Assembly (NCBI GenBank): GCA_976226885.1
Contig: OZ320322.1
Span: 47,988,001 to 48,052,000 of the forward strand
Source: Iphione sp. A-MEVVRFRX5
Taxonomy: Eukaryota
DNA: 64,000 nucleotides
Direction: 5' to 3'
Each line of letters begins with the position of its first letter. The first letter of the stretch is position 1. A model generated the notes under the pieces. The model searched no databases and was not told where the DNA came from. It saw nothing but the letters and a program-made list of their open reading frames with translations. The position numbers were made by a program, and so were the translations under genes. Below are positions 22,930 through 30,911 of this stretch, piece by piece.

Positions 22930-25216
22930 TGTATATATGGAGATAGAGATAAGGAGTGTGTAGGAAAGGGATTGAGGTAAAAAGCGTTTGGATATGAAAC
23001 TATGGTAAGGAGAGTGTGTGGATAAGGGTCAGACAAAGAGTATGTAGGTAAAGTATTTAGGTAATGAATGTATAATGGAGTAATTGAAGTAAGAAGTGTG
23101 CATATAAGAGACTGATGTAAGTAGTGTGTATGTAAAAGATAAGTAAGGAGTGTGTAGATGAGGAACTAAAGTTATTAGTATATAGATGAGGGACTGAGGT
23201 AAGTAGTGTGTACATAAGTAATTGAAGTAAATAATATGTAGATGGGAGATTGAGGGAAAGAGGGTGCATATAAGAAATGGAGGTAAGGAGTGTGTAGATG
23301 AAAGGCTGGGGTAAGGAGTGTGTAGATGAGGAACGGAGGGAAGAAGTGGGAAAATGAGGGGGTATAGATGAGTAACTGACGAAAGGAGTGAGTAAATGAA
23401 GGATAAAGGAAAAAAGTGTGTAGAAAAGGGATTGAGGGCGGGAGTGTGTAAATGAAAGATAGAGGTAAGGAATGTGTCGACGAGGGATTAATGGAAGATG
23501 TAAATGAGTGGTAAGGAGTGTGTAGACGAGGGATTGATGGAAGAAGTGTAGACGAAGAATCGAGAAAAGGGGTGGGTAAATGAGGGATAGAAGTAAAGAG
23601 TATGTAGATGAGAGACTAGAGGAAGGAGTGCGCAAATGAGGAACAGAGGTAAAAAGTGTGTAGATAAGGGACTGAGGGCGGGAGCATGCAAATGAAAAAC
23701 AGAGGTAAGGAGCGTGTTGGTGAGGGATTGATGGAAGATGTAAATGAGAAATAGAGGTAAGGAGTGTGTAGGCGAGGGATTGATGGAAGAAGTGTAGATG
23801 AGAAATCGAGGGAAGGGATGGGTAAATGAGGGACAGAAGTCAAGAATATGTAGGTGAAAGACTAGGGGAAGGAGTGCGCAAATGAGGGACAGAGGTAAGG
23901 AGTGTATAGATAAAGTATTGAGTGATGGACTGCAAATGAGGAACTATTGAAAAGAGAGGGTAAATGAGTGATAGGCGTAAAGAGTGTGTAGATAAGGGAC
24001 TTAGATAAGAAATGTAGATGAGGAATTGAAATAAAAAGTAGGATTGGATAATTTGTTATATTTCGTAAAAAAGGTATAACAAAGAAATTTAAAAATGTAA
24101 TACCTTTCTTTAGCTTTTGATTCATTTAATGTTAAAATAACATTGATTTGCGACAGAGACATTAAGATAACTTTCCCTGGGTATTCAGCTCTGAATCAGA
24201 GTATCATATGAATATTGTATAGTGGAAATTTATAGATGAGTGTGCAAATGACGATGAGGGGGTATAGATGAGTAACTGACGAAAGGAGTGAGCAAATGAA
24301 GGACAAAGGAAAAAAGTGTGTAGAAAAGGGATTGAGGGCGGGAGTGTGTAAATGAAAGACAGAGGTAAGGAATGTGTCGAGGAGGGATTAATGGAAGATG
24401 TAAATGAGAGGTAAGGAGTGTGTAGACGAGGGATTGATGGAAGAAGTGTAGACGAGGAATCGAGAGAAGGGGTGGGTAAATGAGGGATAGAAGTAAAGAG
24501 TATGTAGATGAGAGACTAGAGGAAGGAGTGCGCAAATGAGGAACAGAGGTAAGGAGTGTGTAGATAAGGGACTGAGGGAAGGAGTGGGTAAATGAGGGCC
24601 AAAGGTAAAAAGTGTGTAGATAAGGGACTGAGGGCGGGAGCATGCAAATGAAAAACAGAGGTAAGGAGCGTGCTGGTATGGGATTGATGGAAGATGTAGA
24701 TGAGAAATAGAGGTAAGGAGTGTGTAGGCGAGGGATTGATGGAAGAAGTGTAGATGAGAAATCGAGGGAAGGGATGGGTAAATGAGGGACAGAAGTCAAG
24801 AATATGTAGGTGAAAGACTAGGGGAAGGAGTGCGCAAATGAGGGACAGAGGTAAGGAGTGTATAGATAAAGTACTGAGTAATGGACTGCAAATGAGGAAC
24901 TATTGAAAAGAGAGGGTAAATGAGTGATAGACGTAAAGAGTGTGTAGATAAGGGACTTAGATAAGAAATGTAGATGAGGAATTGAAGTAAAAAGTAAGAT
25001 TGGATAATTTGTTATATTTCGTAAAAAAAGTGTAACAAAGAAATTTAAAAATGTAATACCTTTCTTTAGCTTTTGATTCATTCAATGTTAAAATAACATT
25101 GATTTGCGACAGAAACATTAAGAAATGCGACAGCTTTCCCTGGGTATTCAGCTCTGAATCAGAGTATCATATGAATATTGTATAGTGGAAATTTACAGAT
25201 GAGTGTGCAAATGACG
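22930..25216. repeat. Purine-rich complex satellite including a ~0.9-kb tandem duplication (23354-24253 / 24254-25216)
   Basis: Recurrent aaggagtgtgtagatRag units; paired ORFs offset by 956 bp at the right end. Confidence 0.9.
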
Positions 25217-26120: not shown

Positions 26121-26663
26121 CTATGGATGCGAAATATATTGTGACAGTGAATAGGATTTTCGATCCACAAGTTCTTTTATGTCCTGATAGAAATCGGCGC
26201 TGATTACGTTGGCTAAGGTTAAAAAACCTTGTAGAATTTGGGGGTCAATGTTGTATGGCATTCGTTTATTGCTATTGATGTTTCTGTTGATGTTTTTATT
26301 GTAAATCGAAAAATTGCCTTGTGGTGTTGTTGTGTTTGTTTTGTCTCGTGGTGTTTCAGTAGAAGGTATGGTTACGTAATTGCCACTTGGTTTGTAGAAT
26401 GAACGGTTTTGTTGATTTGATTTGTTGATTTCGTTACTTTTGATAAAGGTGTCTGCAGTCATTTGTGTTGTAGTTGCTTCTTTTTGTGTCATTCTGCCAC
26501 GCAATGACTCTGGATTACAAGAGTCCGTTTGTATTGCCGACTCTAGTTGAGGAATACCTCTGAGTGGTTTATGATTGATCATACTATCGTGGCTGCTTGT
26601 ATTTTTAGTATCAGCATTCGCTGTTCGTGCTGCGATGACAACTCGTCTGTCAGTCTGTGGTGT
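26121..26663 (-). CDS. Candidate terminal coding exon of the IRF gene (180 aa, Thr/Asn/Ser-rich)
   Basis: Acceptor ttatttttcAG at 26664-26665 opens a phase-0 frame TPQTDRRVVIAART... that continues through ORF 26121-26582 to the stop. Linkage to IRF is inferred. Confidence 0.45.
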   Translation of the reverse strand, partial: TPQTDRRVVIAARTANADTKNTSSHDSMINHKPLRGIPQLESAIQTDSCNPESLRGRMTQKEATTTQMTADTFIKSNEINKSNQQNRSFYKPSGNYVTIPSTETPRDKTNTTTPQGNFSIYNKNINRNINSNKRMPYNIDPQILQGFLTLANVISADFYQDIKELVDRKSYSLSQYISHP

Positions 26664-27482
26664 CTGAAAAATAATTCAATTTGTTAATTACTTTATTATT
26701 ATAATATTTGCCTTCATATTTCATGAATACTGGTTAGAAGCTAGCAGTGGTAAAATAAAGAGTAGAGAAATTAGTTTTGCGGAGAATTTTACTTTTTCTT
26801 TGGATTTTGCTATGAAAGTAGGATTGTCTATTAGATTCATGTGGTTATCATGAGAAAGTAATAATTATGATTTTTTCCATTTATTATCATTTCCGTTACA
26901 ATATGAAGTATTTTTATGTTATAAGTGTATATGTGAGGGATAGAAAATTAAACATTGTTGACGATTTTCGTGATAGGTAAGTGTGATGGAAATCAAATGG
27001 TTGTGATTCATTAACGAATAAAGATTTAGTATAGATTTGGTATCAATTATATTAGATGATCTTTGTTATATATGGTGGACTTTGGATGAAATATACTTTA
27101 TGAGTAGTTTGATAAGTTTGAAAAACAAACCTCGATTACGTTTTCAAGTGGTGCCTTTTGGTTGCATTCTATTTCAATATGCGTGATAACATCTGGAATA
27201 GAAATAAGTTATCAAAGCATTGGTTAGGTTTTTTTGATCTATTACACAAATTAATGGAATCAAATGATAGGAAATCCTATCATATAATCGGAGTTTGATA
27301 TCAATAGTGATTCTAAAACATTTGTTAAACAGATTCATTTGTATTATAGGGTCTTTTGTCTATGTATTTTTTCGTGTGTGTTCACTTAAGAGGAACATAA
27401 TTGCTGTTAGATACGCCTTGTTTAGGGGACTATTAGTTTAGTTCAAGTACCCTCTTTGTTGTTTCGCGGCTTGATTTCATAC

Positions 27483-27682
27483 CTTTCGTTGGATTGCAAT
27501 GATCTTTCTTTTCTCCAGGACGTCTGTACCATCGTGGAGGGGGATAGTGTTCGTGTAGGAGCGTTGGAGTCTGTTTTGGATCCTCAAAAGTTGATCTAGA
27601 TGAAAGGGGGAGGTAGAGGTTCCTTTGTTCTCCCGGTTTTTCCACAGAATCCGTTGTGATTCCAAAAGTAAGCAGTTGGAAA
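27483..27682 (-). CDS. Candidate internal IRF exon (phase 1 to phase 0)
   Basis: Open frame SNCLLLESQRILW...IIAIQRK ending at AAG|GTATGA. The acceptor is weak (aaaAG) but is preceded by a CACTAAT branch-like motif. Confidence 0.35.
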
Positions 27683-28149
27683 CTTTTAGTTCATAATATG
27701 ATTAGTGAAACAGTTTTCTTTCAATACATATGTAGACTAACGATTCTTATATATATTTTCTTGCCATTTCATCAATAGTTTCTGAATTTCAATTTATAGG
27801 TTAAATATTAAAGTGAGGACAATTCGTTGACGCATAAATGAACAAAATTTTTTACATAAGCTATGTCAGTATGTTTTTAATCTATAACACGTTCTAAGGG
27901 TTATGTGTTCAAAATACTAACATTTAAAAATTCAAATTCGGTAGAACTGGAGAAGCATAGAATTTGTATGATATTTTGAACTATATATTTAAGTTTTTTT
28001 ATTTATATCTATCAAATAAGGTGGATGTTGTTGGATAATACTCATGTATAGGTGAGTCTGCTCTGCCTATAGATACTAACTGGGGTTTTCGCTTTGATAA
28101 AATACTCTTGGATACATATATATATATGTAGATATAAAATTACACGTAC

Positions 28150-28330
28150 TTTTTCCATTTGGTGTGAACATACAAACTTTATAGGGATTATCCCCCTCTA
28201 GATCTGAAAGACCTTTTAGTTCTATAATATCAGAACATTTATTGATGGCGGCTCGAAAACGCGCTTTCCACTTCCCCCATTCTACTTTGTTCAGATCCTG
28301 GTGATATTTTCCTGTATATTGGGACCACTT
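28150..28330 (-). CDS. IRF: IRF DNA-binding domain, second exon
   Basis: ttttaacAG|KWSQYTGKYHQDLNKVEWGKWKARFRAAINKCSDIIELKGLSDLEGDNPYKVCMFTPNGK|GTACGT. Contains the fifth Trp, the recognition helix and the PYKV motif. Confidence 0.93.
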
Positions 28331-28896
28331 CTGTTAAAATAATAAGATAATTTATTACAATGAATATCACTGTAGAGTGGAAGAAAAGTAATGCAAAATA
28401 TGATGGGTGAGTTTTAATTTAGATGAGATATGAATCTCAAGAGATCAAAGTACTACATCTTTGTGTACATGCATATACGTAAAGTTTACTATTTCAATGA
28501 TTTGCGTAACATGGCTATCTAAGGAAAATGGATAAATTCAAAGAGTCACATTTGTATTTTCTAGTTTATGGTATCAATTTATTGTAAAAGTAGTTTTAGT
28601 TGAGTTTATATAGTAGGTTAACGTAAACGTGTTTTAGTGGTTTCATTTCAGTGGGTTAAATTTGAGCAATTAGGTGCGTAAACAAGTGAATTTGAATTGT
28701 CAGTTGAAAAATATAGAAAAAGGTAAGCATTTATAAATTTCAGTTGAGTTATTACTGGCAACGTATATACAAATGGTATTGTAAATCAAGTTAAGATATT
28801 TTTCACTAAATAGGGTCAATTAATAGGTACACCATGCAAGATCTTTGAATTTAATAGGGAGGAAGGGGGGGGGGGGGGGGGGGGGGTTGTACTAAC

Positions 28897-29064
28897 CATA
28901 TATATCTGTGCATCCTGTACAGACCAACCCTGCTTTGCACCATCTGGCCATGGAATGCAGAAGATTCCTTTTTCTTGGTTTATCCATCGAAGTCCTGGGA
29001 TATCACTACTGTTCAGCTTGGATATTAGCCACGGCTTCAAACGGCCACGACTTATATTTCCTGG
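28897..29064 (-). CDS. IRF: IRF DNA-binding domain, first exon
   Basis: attcAG|PGNISRGRLKPWLISKLNSSDIPGLRWINQEKGIFCIPWPDGAKQGWSVQDAQIYM|GTTAGT. Four of the five IRF tryptophans; phase 0 at both ends. Confidence 0.95.
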
Positions 29065-29406
29065 CTGAATATGTGTTGTGTAGAAAGAAAGATAGGTAAT
29101 AGAAACAATACAATTGTAAGTTTAGGGTAAAAATGTAAGAGTAATTAGAGTTATTATTTCATTAGTGAGCATAATGGGGGATTACATTTTTGTCGGTTGA
29201 TTAAATTCGTTTTCGGTGTTTTGTTGTTATTTATAAATCTACGTGTTTTCTCCTTTGAAGATTTTTGTTAAACTTTACGTACTTCCCAGTGTATAGCTTG
29301 TTGCATAAATACAAATGTTCAAAGTAATTAATGTGTTTTTTTCGCCTTCCTACATATACATATATATAGTTTCATACGGTAGTGTAGTCAATTATTTTCA
29401 ACTTAC

Positions 29407-30015
29407 GGATTCTGGTGTTGATGATGAAGGAATTTGTGCGATTGATGATTTCGAATGCCTTTCTTTGGGAGAAGATGAATCATTGCAGGTTTGTGATGTC
29501 TTTCCCATGTACAACAAGTTATCTGAGTTTACTACAGTGGGGATGGCGAGAGATGTCTTGTTGAGCTGGCGAGTGGGAATTGTGTTGACGACTGGAGCTA
29601 TTGTTTGAGTGAGGAGGGGCTGGATATTGGTGTCAACGTTATTTGATTTTAATGATATTGGTACGAGGCAGATATTTGCACGGGATGAGTTCGTAGGCCT
29701 GATGTTCGTTCTCAAGGAAGTAGGATTTTCGTTCAAGGAAACCCTCGATACATTTTCTTCTGTTTTAGAGTTTTTCGGTGTATTCGTAATGACGTAAGTG
29801 TTGTCTTGGATAGGTAATTGTATGGCCAGTTTATTTGTCATGATGGGATGTGATTTAGAGGTTTCTGTAGAGTTATAAGTTGGTGTATAATGTATTGAAG
29901 AGCGGTCAATCTTAATTCTTTTTGGAGCGGGAGGAGAGACTTCTTCTGAGACTTGTTTCACAGGGATTATTTCTATGGTTCCCAGCACTTTAGAGTTATT
30001 GTGTGATTTAATCAT
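29407..30015 (-). CDS. IRF: First coding exon of the IRF gene: 203-aa S/T/N/P-rich N-terminal extension with NLS-like PAPKRIK
   Basis: ATG at 30015 with an in-frame upstream stop; ends GAATCC|GTAAGT in phase 0, matching the next exon. Upstream acceptor at 30104-30105 and a further donor at 30839-30844 suggest a non-coding first exon. Confidence 0.72.
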
Positions 30016-30911
30016 GATGAAGAAAGTGAAGACAATTGGGATGAGATGTGGATACCGTGGATTATATTATTCTAAATATTTCCTCGTAGTTATGGAGATA
30101 TACCTAAATGACCGGCAATAAAAAAACAAAGAGTAATTGTTAAACATTATGCATTACACAAAAATTGTAGAGTGAATGTTGGAAAATTCGTGATGATGGG
30201 GGATATCTGTAGTAATTAAAAACGAAGAAATCGAATGTTATTCAAAGGTAAGCGATTGATAAAATAGGAATACCAATCAATAGTAAATCAAGTAGAATGC
30301 AAATTAATAATAATTAAGTATGAGGGAAATGTATTTATATAATTGTGTTATCTAAGTAATTAAAATGTGAAACGTGTATTTATGTTGCTTTTACTAGAAC
30401 TGCTATCAAACATAGATAATGAAACGTTGCTGTTCTGACATTATGTTATTTCATAGAAATTCATTAGAAATGGGGAAAAATAGGAAATGTAGTCATTTGG
30501 TACTGTTTTATTGGTAAAGGTCTATTGATGTTTTCTTAAAGTATCAGTTTCTTTGCTATAATATAAAGATTTTGAGGAACTAGTATATGCGTATGTGGAA
30601 TATGTACAATATTAAGAGGTGTTCTTTTTAGTATATATTTTATATACGAAGTTATTCTTAAATTGGGGGATAATGTAAAGCAGTATAACATAGATAATGC
30701 ATGAATGATGTGGTAATATTACAATTTGGAAGAAAAGGAAAAAAAGTATTGATTAGATTGTGTGTTGTGAACGTTAGTGAGATCTAATAAAATATATGAA
30801 TATGTTTATGGGTAGTGAGTTATGAAATAATTAAAAATACTTACAGCGATAGGAAGTATAAACTCGTATTTCAGTGTGCAATTATCTGCAAATGTGTAGA
30901 CGTTTTCCGTA

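What the first reader, a model, noticed from the sequence alone, without database searches (positions are those of the whole stretch)
26121..30015. IRF with an internal DNA-binding domain, a long N-terminal extension and no recognisable IAD
Seen: a 203-codon S/T/N/P-rich exon with PAPKRIK splices in phase to the DBD, placing it at about residue 212; downstream candidate exons are low-complexity with no SMAD-like IAD1 that I can recognise. Established: canonical IRFs start with the DBD at the N-terminus, and most carry a C-terminal IAD. Inference: a lineage-specific IRF architecture, possibly a repressor or decoy, or made by exon capture.
Basis: partly seen in the sequence, partly recalled or inferred. 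Interest (0 to 1): 0.72.

Follow-up and report, generated by a model that had tools for sequence, protein, structure and literature searches.

The report
IRF gene with internal DNA-binding domain
This is a real five-exon invertebrate interferon-regulatory-factor gene whose DNA-binding domain sits behind a 203-residue disordered leader and which has no partner-binding domain. It is a heavily mutated, triplicated offshoot of an older gene elsewhere in the genome, so it is a modest lineage-specific variant, not a new kind of factor.

Summary
On the minus strand a 203-codon ORF (30015-29407) ends at a consensus donor. It joins in phase 0 to a two-exon IRF DNA-binding domain (29064-28897 and 28330-28150; Pfam PF00605, 50.5 and 41.9 bits), so the DBD starts at about residue 212. 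No IAD1 was found in the window.

A diverged paralogue on contig C11 has the same five exons and the same splice sites. This scan had already described the C11 gene on other DNA (s1-339628, s1-339641).

- **Origin of the leader.** The canonical IAD1-bearing neighbour of the C11 gene starts with ATG directly after the homologous acceptor. The leader therefore arose when the start codon moved into an upstream exon.
- **C-terminus.** The tail is disordered and ends in one conserved helix, which is shared with a C2H2 zinc-finger ORF family.
- **Mutation and selection.** About half of all sense-strand G's in the C11 copy read A in the window copy. Yet 0 of 37 stop-creating transitions occurred, so selection kept the reading frame.
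- **Copies.** Three 99.6%-identical copies exist.

No RNA data and no relatives in other species were found. A repressor or decoy role is untested.

The parts
29407..30015 (-). Exon A: ATG plus 203 codons, the N-terminal extension. It is predicted to be disordered. It ends at a GTAAGT donor in phase 0.
   Evidence: ORF and donor. 52% aa identity, gapless, to C11:24833330-24833938. ATG and donor conserved. AF2 mean pLDDT 31.5. Neutral simulation P(no stop) 0.008.
29911..29931 (-). Basic motif P-A-P-K-R-I-K (residues 29-35), a candidate nuclear localisation signal.
   Evidence: Read. K32, R33 and K35 are invariant in the C11 paralogue. The NLS role is inferred from the K-R-x-K pattern only.
29065..29406 (-). 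Intron 1 (342 nt). It sits at the position where the canonical neighbour gene has the intron immediately before its ATG.
28897..29064 (-). Exon B: 56 codons, the first half of the IRF DNA-binding domain. It has no start codon of its own.
   Evidence: PF00605 positions 1-48, 50.5 bits. Best solved relatives are IRF2, IRF1 and IRF4.
28150..28330 (-). Exon C: 60 codons plus 1 nt, the second half of the DBD with the recognition helix.
   Evidence: PF00605 positions 50-103, 41.9 bits. Best solved relative is IRF4. dN/dS 0.23. Nonsynonymous G>A 4/27 against synonymous 8/15.
27372..27721 (.). SINE-like interspersed repeat inserted in intron 3 of the window lineage. It contains the mid-gene open frames and is not an exon.
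   Evidence: No counterpart in the C11 paralogue. More than 30 dispersed copies at 66-76% identity.
27131..27192 (-). Exon E: 2 nt plus 20 codons, a linker. It completes the split codon left by exon C.
   Evidence: Acceptor, donor and phase conserved in C11.
26121..26663 (-). Last exon: 180 codons plus stop. The first 130 residues are disordered.
   Evidence: 45% aa identity to C11:24827937-24828467, with indels only in multiples of three. AF2 pLDDT below 50 for residues 1-130.
26130..26243 (-). Conserved C-terminal helix (residues 141-178 of the last exon), a module shared with a C2H2 zinc-finger ORF family.
   Evidence: AF2 predicts one helix at pLDDT about 90. dN/dS 0.25 over the last 45 aligned codons. 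Similarity to the C-termini of L044 (430-aa ORF with a zf-Di19/C2H2 match) and L043.

Best explanation
The stretch holds a real, selection-maintained gene of five coding exons: 30015-29407, 29064-28897, 28330-28150, 27192-27131 and 26663-26121, minus strand, about 520 aa.

**The protein, in order**
1. A 203-residue disordered leader with a K-R-x-K basic motif.
2. A complete IRF DNA-binding domain of IRF4/8-like ancestry.
3. A 150-residue disordered linker.
4. One conserved C-terminal helix.

There is no IAD1.

**History (shown by comparison)**
1. A canonical IRF4/8-like gene on contig C11 has its ATG directly after the acceptor of the DBD exon, and it carries an IAD1. It was duplicated tail-to-tail.
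2. The sister copy lost that ATG, so translation starts in the upstream exon. It also replaced the IAD with a disordered tail that ends in a helix module, also found at the C-termini of C2H2 zinc-finger ORFs.
3. A gene-sized copy of that sister landed in the present region and diverged by about 26%. The change was context-independent and strand-asymmetric, from GC to AT.
4. The region was then copied to three places, which are now 99.6% identical.

**Mechanism (inferred)**
The protein is nuclear and binds GAAA-type IRF sites through its DBD. Without an IAD1 it cannot form the IAD-mediated IRF or partner complexes. It would therefore act as a competitor or modulator of the canonical paralogue at shared sites. 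The C-terminal helix would serve as its only interaction or oligomerisation surface, and the leader as a fast-evolving disordered region.

The window copy is a relaxed derivative. Its DBD has changed at the loop motif W-K-H (now W-P-D) and at the helix Cys (now Ala). It also lacks the PxDLS motif of the C11 copy.
For: **Gene model**
- Pfam IRF matches on both DBD exons.
- All junctions, phases and the ATG are conserved between the window and C11 copies.
- The DBD exon has no ATG of its own.
- The neighbour gene has cag|ATG at the homologous acceptor.

**Selection** (polarised with the C11 state as ancestor)
- G>A hit 55% of synonymous G sites and 52% of non-exonic G sites. It hit 40% of nonsynonymous sites (p=0.005) and 0 of 14 stop-creating sites (p=1e-4).
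- C>T hit 24% of synonymous and 28% of non-exonic sites, 15% of nonsynonymous sites (p=2e-4), and 0 of 23 stop-creating sites (p=0.001).
- Neutral simulation gives P(no stop) of 0.008 for exon A, 0.026 for exon B and 0.06 for exon C.
- dN/dS is 0.23 for exon C and 0.25 for the C-terminal helix, against 0.6 for the leader.
- Indels in the last exon are in-frame.

**Ancestry**
- The DBD of the C11 extended gene is 73% and 79% identical (exons B and C) to its IAD1 neighbour, against 35-60% to the other IRF loci.
- The closest outside DBDs are molluscan IRF4/5/8-like proteins.
- The best solved relative of the recognition-helix exon is IRF4.

**No IAD and no folded domain outside the DBD:**

**Three intact copies:**

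**DBD integrity:** the five conserved Trp and the helix Arg, Asn and Lys are kept.
Against: - There is no transcript evidence at all. No RNA run was listed, so the A-B junction, expression and copy-specific activity are unproven.
- Averaged over the gene, exonic divergence (26.1%) equals non-exonic divergence (25.8%).
- The leader shows no amino-acid constraint against G>A: nonsynonymous 46/86, synonymous 25/50. For the leader alone, the transition-based evidence for keeping the frame open is thin (0 of 9 stop-creating sites).
- The window DBD is the most divergent in the genome and has lost canonical backbone-contact residues, so DNA binding may be weakened.
- No orthologue in any other species supports the model.
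- The functional role (competitor or modulator) rests only on domain logic.
- The selection test takes the C11 state as ancestral. That is supported only by C11's higher Pfam scores.
Confidence: 0.6

Rival explanations
1. The three window-type copies are silent or dying duplicates. The frames are open only because selection acted in the past, before or during the GC-to-AT change. The functional gene of this architecture is the C11 copy.
For: - Other notes of this scan read this same region as mutationally eroded (I did not check them).
- Overall exon divergence equals intron divergence.
- The DBD contact motifs are changed, and this DBD is the most divergent in the genome.
- The PxDLS motif is lost, and the stop codon has shifted by 10 codons.
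- No RNA run was listed.
- The three copies differ by only 5 exonic sites (3 synonymous, 2 nonsynonymous). That is too few to show current constraint.
Against: - 0 of 37 stop-creating transitions occurred where about 14 are expected at intron rates.
- Nonsynonymous sites are hit less often than synonymous sites.
- G>A in the DBD exons is half the intron rate.
- All ten splice signals and the ATG are intact in all three copies.
- There are no frameshifts.
Confidence: 0.25
2. The 203-codon ORF is not joined to the DBD in real transcripts. It would be a separate small gene or an untranslated first exon, and the IRF protein would start from another, unseen upstream exon.
For: - There is no transcript evidence.
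- The leader has no detectable fold, family or relatives outside this genome.
- Its amino-acid sequence is barely constrained.
- If the donor were read through, the frame would stop two codons later, so a stand-alone 205-aa ORF is formally possible.
Against: - The DBD exon has no ATG and needs an upstream coding exon.
- The ORF ends exactly at a consensus donor in phase 0, facing a phase-0 acceptor. ATG, donor and acceptor are all conserved in a paralogue whose intron is three times longer.
- The frame is gapless over 203 codons, whereas the non-coding parts carry indels.
- The canonical neighbour has an intron at the same place, directly before its ATG.
Confidence: 0.12
3. The protein is an activator, not a competitor. 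The conserved C-terminal helix is acidic and hydrophobic, like short transactivation helices. It would recruit co-activators to IRF sites independently of an IAD.
For: - The helix is the best conserved non-DBD part (dN/dS 0.25).
- It is confidently helical.
- It also ends zinc-finger ORFs, which are putative transcription factors.
- The window copy lacks the PxDLS co-repressor motif.
Against: - This is pure sequence resemblance, recalled from general knowledge of activation helices. Nothing was tested.
- The C11 parent carries a PxDLS motif, which points the other way.
- The helix could equally be a dimerisation element.
Confidence: 0.2

Closest known systems
The C11 paralogue in the same genome (C11:24827928-24833938, minus strand), reported earlier in this scan as the IAD-less partner of a tail-to-tail IRF pair
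   Same: It has the same five coding exons, the same splice sites and phases, and a 203-codon leader (52% aa identity). It has the same DBD, disordered tail and C-terminal helix.
   Different: - The window copy is about 26% diverged at the DNA level, almost all of it GC to AT.
- Its DBD is less canonical.
- It lacks the P-M-D-L-S motif.
- It reads 10 codons past the C11 stop.
- It carries a SINE-like insertion in intron 3.
- It exists in three 99.6%-identical copies.
Canonical IRF4/IRF8-group factors: the C11 neighbour gene, molluscan IRF4/5/8-like proteins and vertebrate IRF4
   Same: The DBD is of this lineage. The nearest in-genome DBD of the C11 extended gene is the IAD1-bearing neighbour (73% and 79%). 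IRF4 is the best solved relative of the recognition-helix exon. The five Trp and the helix Arg, Asn and Lys are kept.
   Different: Canonical members start with the DBD: the neighbour reads M-S-S-E-S-R-Q-R-L-R-P-W. They also carry a C-terminal IAD1 (PF10401). Here the DBD starts at about residue 212 and no IAD1 exists.
IRF1/IRF2 group (IAD1-less IRFs with the short, poorly conserved IAD2; oyster CgIRF1 is described that way in PMC13524488)
   Same: These too are IRFs without an IAD1, with a C-terminal half that is largely non-globular. IRF2 is the best solved relative of exon B.
   Different: The DBD is N-terminal in IRF1/2. The window tail shows no similarity to them in any search here. The DBD ancestry in this genome is with the IAD1-bearing gene. 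IAD2 has no profile that I could test.
Predicted proteins with internal IRF domains in public proteomes (for example Owenia fusiformis CAH1797375.1, Acipenser ruthenus XP_058871454.1)
   Same: The IRF domain lies far from the N-terminus. Among the 150 best DBD hits, 64 are at least 250 aa long, and 6 of those 64 have the domain starting after residue 200.
   Different: Those are long multi-domain or multi-IRF automatic models. Their N-terminal parts are unrelated to this leader. None is experimentally characterised as far as these tools show.

Membership tests
IRF transcription factor family (Pfam PF00605 DNA-binding domain) | The sequence matches the IRF DBD profile above the curated threshold. 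| tested here: met
   Exon B scores 50.5 bits (positions 1-48) and exon C 41.9 bits (positions 50-103). The cut-off is 27 bits. The genome scan gives the same result.
IRF transcription factor family (Pfam PF00605 DNA-binding domain) | The tryptophan pentad of the DBD is present. | tested here: met
   All five conserved Trp positions, and the sixth Trp before the recognition helix, align with IRF2 and IRF4 chains. None of the 14 stop-creating G>A sites was hit.
IRF transcription factor family (Pfam PF00605 DNA-binding domain) | The recognition-helix contact residues are present (Arg, Cys, Asn and Ser/Lys of R-C-x-x-N-S/K). | tested here: inconclusive
   Arg, Asn and Lys are kept and Cys is replaced by Ala (alignment to IRF4 chains). 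The upstream loop motif W-K-H reads W-P-D. Binding itself cannot be tested with these tools.
IRF transcription factor family (Pfam PF00605 DNA-binding domain) | The DBD lies at the extreme N-terminus. | tested here: not met
   The DBD starts at about residue 212 of the model. The model is supported by the paralogue but not by RNA.
IRF3-9 type (IAD1-bearing IRFs, including the IRF4/8 group) | A C-terminal IAD1 (SMAD/FHA-like domain, Pfam PF10401) is present. | tested here: not met
   - No PF10401 match in the window at E<=1.
- No tblastn match of the C11 IAD-region ORF fragments better than E 0.25.
- The last exon is predicted as 130 disordered residues plus one helix.

Exon-by-exon profile search and shallow-alignment AF2 are both of limited sensitivity.
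IRF3-9 type (IAD1-bearing IRFs, including the IRF4/8 group) | The DBD groups with IRF4/8-type DBDs. | tested here: met
   - The nearest in-genome relative of the lineage is the IAD1-bearing C11 gene.
- IRF4 is the best solved match of exon C.
- The best outside hits are named IRF4/5/8-like.

This is based on per-exon identities only, with no tree.
IRF1/2 type (IAD2-bearing) | A C-terminal IAD2 is present. | not testable with these tools
   No profile for IAD2 is in the libraries used. No similarity of the tail to anything outside this genome was found.
CtBP-recruiting repressors (PxDLS motif) | A P-x-D-L-S motif lies in an accessible region. | tested here: not met
   The motif is present in the C11 copy (P-M-D-L-S). 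The window copy has a deletion and substitutions at that place (alignment).

The most novel reading that the evidence does not exclude
The extended IRFs may be a new IRF subclass assembled in one lineage by two steps that can still be read in the DNA. The first was loss of the ancestral ATG, which turned the former 5' exon into a 203-residue disordered leader. The second was replacement of the IAD by a helix module shared with zinc-finger genes.

The window copies would then be working members that passed through a regional, strand-asymmetric, context-free GC-to-AT mutational flood. About half of all sense-strand G's changed. That would amount to a natural mutational scan showing that only the open frame, the recognition-helix half of the DBD and the terminal helix matter.
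Probability: 0.3. Interest if true: 0.62.

Novelty: new variant of a known kind. Interest (0 to 1): 0.42.

Why it matters
IRFs are central immune transcription factors, and their invertebrate diversification is poorly understood. This locus shows, step by step, how a canonical IRF can be rebuilt into a protein with an internal DBD and no partner-binding domain. The start codon shifts into an upstream exon, and the C-terminal module is swapped.

It also gives a rare polarised test of which parts stay under selection during extreme mutational bias. If the gene is expressed, it would be a candidate competitor or modulator of the canonical IRF4/8-like factor in an invertebrate antiviral or haemocyte programme.

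If the copies are silent, the value lies mainly in the mutational signature of the region, which is the subject of another finding.

Tried and rejected
- **RNA evidence.** The look-up of sequencing runs listed no run, so read laying could not be used.
- **Exact look-up of the 205-aa ORF in public assemblies.** Nothing on record.
- **Word-based protein searches.** The window leader, the C11 leader and the tail module (through the 430-aa zinc-finger ORF) gave no hits. The length limit of the tool (0.55-1.75 times the query) means that full-length orthologues of about 520 aa were out of reach for the two leader searches.
- **Exhaustive search with DBD exon B.** It found 602 relatives. The best are about 55% identical, and none of the 150 best shares the leader or tail.
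- **ESM Atlas on the terminal helix.** Only sub-threshold unnamed clusters.
- **Mid-gene candidate exon (about 27645-27433).** Rejected because it lies in a repeat insertion.
- **CpG decay as the cause of the AT shift.** Rejected because the rates are equal in all dinucleotide contexts.
- **Transcription-coupled asymmetry.** Rejected because the same asymmetry holds upstream of the ATG.
- **An ISRE-like site upstream (30732-30741).** It is not conserved in C11 and I dropped it.
- **A 28-residue resemblance of the window tail to a high-copy 510-aa ORF repeat.** Marginal (whole-genome E about 0.03) and found in the window copy only. I left it as a note.
- **A 20-kb DNA self-search for the duplication limits.** It was swamped by repeats, so I replaced it with direct comparison of fetched flanks.
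- **Fetching more of C11.** I tiled the C11 gene from loci already held.
- **One script with typed peptide strings.** I re-ran it by reference.
- **The joined step.** I neither searched nor folded the joined 520-aa spliced protein.
Full report
**1. What is in the sequence**

The gene lies on the minus strand. A 203-codon ORF runs from an ATG at 30015 to 29407 and ends at a GTAAGT donor. After a 342-nt intron, a ...ttcag acceptor opens an exon at 29064 in phase 0.

Pfam places the first half of the IRF DNA-binding domain in 29064-28897 (profile positions 1-48, 50.5 bits). It places the second half in 28330-28150 (positions 50-103, 41.9 bits). Both are above the 27-bit curated cut-off.

The DBD exon has no in-frame ATG ahead of the domain (read), so it needs an upstream coding exon. 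The motif P-A-P-K-R-I-K is at residues 29-35.

**2. The gene model, from a paralogue**

No RNA run was listed for this stretch, so I used comparison instead.

The genome (1.18 Gb; the window is C22:47988001-48052000) has IRF-domain exons at eight loci. Searching the leader and the last exon against the genome found two things:
- three essentially identical loci;
- one diverged paralogue, C11:24827928-24833938 on the minus strand. Its leader is 52% identical over all 203 codons, with no gap and no stop. Its last exon is 45% identical.

I tiled the C11 gene from loci already held and compared it with the window gene. The ATG and all donors and acceptors sit at homologous positions with the same phases.

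This defines five coding exons:

| Exon | Window coordinates | Content |
|---|---|---|
| A | 30015-29407 | 203 codons |
| B | 29064-28897 | 56 codons |
| C | 28330-28150 | 60 codons + 1 nt |
| E | 27192-27131 | 2 nt + 20 codons |
| Last | 26663-26121 | 180 codons + stop |

The product is about 520 aa. The open frames at about 27645-27433 fall in a 350-nt segment that has no counterpart in C11. That segment has more than 30 dispersed copies at 66-76% identity, so it is a SINE-like insertion and not an exon. I did not search or fold the joined protein; every search was exon by exon.

**3. Is the leader really coding?**

The window and C11 genes can be aligned through their introns. Raw divergence is the same in exons (26.1%) and outside them (25.8%). 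At first sight that looks neutral.

The differences are extremely one-sided, however. On the sense strand about half of the G's of C11 read A in the window copy, and about a quarter of the C's read T. The reverse changes affect only 5-9% of sites. That allows a polarised test with C11 as the ancestral state, an assumption supported only by C11's higher Pfam scores.

| Site class | G>A | C>T |
|---|---|---|
| Synonymous | 55% | 24% |
| Non-exonic | 52% | 28% |
| Nonsynonymous | 40% (p=0.005) | 15% (p=2e-4) |
| Stop-creating | 0 of 14 (p=1e-4) | 0 of 23 (p=0.001) |

About 14 stops would be expected at intron rates, and none occurred.

Further evidence points the same way:
- A simulation with the intron spectrum gives P(no stop) of 0.008 for exon A, 0.026 for exon B and 0.06 for exon C.
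- Indels in the last exon are multiples of three.
- Constraint is uneven. dN/dS is 0.23 for exon C, which holds the recognition helix, and 0.25 for the last 45 codons. It is about 0.6 for the leader and exon B, and about 0.8 for the rest of the tail.
- In the leader, nonsynonymous G>A (46/86) is as frequent as synonymous (25/50).

So selection kept the leader open and in frame, but its residues are almost free to vary. That is the behaviour of a disordered region. AlphaFold2 with the two-sequence alignment gives mean pLDDT 31.5 for the leader, which is weak evidence but consistent.

**4. Where the architecture came from**

The only IAD1 (PF10401) in the genome is at C11:24810202-24811011 on the plus strand. 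It belongs to the IRF gene whose DBD exons lie at C11:24797412-24800587. That gene is tail-to-tail with the C11 extended gene.

The canonical neighbour reads cag|ATG directly after the acceptor of its DBD exon, and its protein begins M-S-S-E-S-R-Q-R-L-R-P-W. The extended genes read cag|CCA GGA at the homologous place. The ancestral start codon was therefore lost, the intron position was kept, and translation moved into the upstream exon.

The DBD of the C11 extended gene is 73% (exon B) and 79% (exon C) identical to this neighbour, against 35-60% for the other IRF loci. Outside the DBD exons the two C11 genes share no DNA similarity, so the split is old.

The leader has no other relative in the genome. 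I found none in public proteins either, and none among the 150 best DBD relatives.

**5. The C-terminus**

The last exon is predicted as 130 disordered residues followed by a single helix. The helix covers residues 141-178 at pLDDT about 90, and there is no beta-rich IAD-like fold.

The helix and some 70 residues before it resemble the C-termini of other ORFs in this genome. One is a 430-aa ORF on C4 with a C2H2/zf-Di19 match. This is a portable C-terminal module, and it fits a 3' exon swap.

The earlier scan note s1-339641 called the partner a transposon protein. What I see is a zinc-finger ORF; I did not test whether it is mobile. That note also pointed to a PxDLS motif. I confirm P-M-D-L-S in the C11 copy and find it absent from the window copy, which has a three-codon deletion plus substitutions there. 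The window copy also reads 10 codons past the C11 stop.

**6. State of the window copy**

Its DBD keeps all conserved Trp and the Arg, Asn and Lys of the recognition helix. The helix Cys is now Ala, and the loop motif W-K-H is W-P-D. It is the most divergent IRF DBD in the genome.

The G>A rate in the two DBD exons (0.25-0.27) is half that of the introns (0.44-0.55). The domain was therefore protected while the region mutated.

The whole window belongs to a block present three times. The C22:32.95-33.01M copy matches most of the 64-kb window. The C2:18.29-18.32M copy matches the first 35 kb. Most aligned blocks are 98.9-99.8% identical. Over the gene the three copies differ at 26 positions. 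Five of these are exonic (three synonymous, two nonsynonymous), and none lies near a junction. I cannot tell real triplication from assembly duplication.

**7. Comparison with what is known**

This is an IRF by its DBD, and that membership test is met. It fails two features of canonical IRFs, the N-terminal DBD and the IAD1. It should therefore not be filed as an IRF4/8 orthologue, even though its DBD descends from that group.

IAD1-less IRFs are familiar: IRF1/2, and oyster CgIRF1 with a poorly conserved IAD2 (PMC13524488). In this genome only one IRF locus has a detectable IAD1, so the missing IAD is unremarkable here.

The internal position of the DBD is rarer. Among the 150 best DBD hits, 64 are at least 250 aa long. 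In 6 of those 64 the domain starts after residue 200. All six are automatic models, mostly long multi-domain proteins, with unrelated N-termini.

The best outside DBD hits are gastropod, bivalve and chiton IRF4/5/8-like proteins at about 50-55% identity. This suggests, weakly, a molluscan or other lophotrochozoan host.

**8. Mechanism and verdict**

*Shown*
- The gene structure, by paralogue comparison.
- The descent from the canonical neighbour.
- The start-codon shift.
- The loss of the IAD1.
- The shared terminal helix.
- Selection for the open frame, for the recognition-helix half of the DBD, and for the terminal helix.

*Inferred*
- Nuclear import through the K-R-x-K motif.
- Binding to GAAA-type sites.
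- Action as a competitor or modulator of the canonical paralogue.
- The terminal helix as the only interaction surface.

The repressor or decoy idea stays open. The C11 parent has a co-repressor motif, the window copy does not, and the acidic-hydrophobic helix could equally activate.

The main rival is that the three window copies are silent and decaying. That rival cannot be excluded without RNA.

This scan had already described the same architecture on other DNA, the C11 pair (s1-339628, s1-339641). The window adds a hypermutated, triplicated derivative and the selection test. I rate it a new variant of a known kind, of moderate interest.

Noticed in passing
window 26155-30798 compared with C11:24827941-24835120 (tiled from L042, L005, L002, L038): GC-to-AT change is extreme, context-independent and strand-asymmetric. 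About 52% of the sense-strand G's and 28% of the C's of the C11 copy read A or T in the window copy. The rates are alike in every dinucleotide context. The asymmetry also holds in the 780 nt upstream of the ATG. This is neither CpG decay nor a transcription-limited effect. GC content is 33.6% in the window gene region against 39.6% in C11.
   Followed up: partly
window 1-64000; C2:18287278-18321774; C22:32956848-33014406: The window is part of a large block present three times in the assembly. Most aligned blocks are 98.9-99.8% identical. One copy lies on another chromosome-scale contig and one lies 15 Mb away on the same contig. I could not decide between real segmental triplication and an assembly artefact.
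   Followed up: partly
window 27372-27721: This is a SINE-like interspersed repeat with more than 30 dispersed copies at 66-76% identity. It is inserted in intron 3 of the window-lineage IRF and is absent from the C11 paralogue.
   Followed up: yes
L044 (C4:58349427-58352633), ORF 2772-1483 minus strand; L043 (C19:40341106-40344318): A family of ORFs carries a C2H2/zf-Di19-type zinc finger and a long disordered region. They end in the same helix module as the IRF tail (P-Y-D/N-I ... D-L-Y-D/Q-D). At least six loci match weakly. The family has no hits in public proteins by word search.
   Followed up: partly
window 26466-26549 (residues 39-66 of the last exon); L045-L048: This 28-residue stretch of the window tail is 68% identical to part of a high-copy ORF of about 510 aa with no Pfam family. 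The C11 copy does not show the match. It could be chance or a small repeat-derived patch.
   Followed up: partly
window 23862-25118: Just downstream of the IRF stop there is a tandem duplication of about 950 nt. It carries near-identical 87-aa and 53-aa ORFs on the minus strand (also the 97% self-match). It is probably repeat sequence.
   Followed up: no
G000 C2:29405246-29410518 and C17:79916302-79919318; C19:12281475-12282835: There are three further IRF-domain loci with no detectable IAD1. The C2 and C17 loci are a close pair (76% and 93% identity in the two DBD exons).
   Followed up: no
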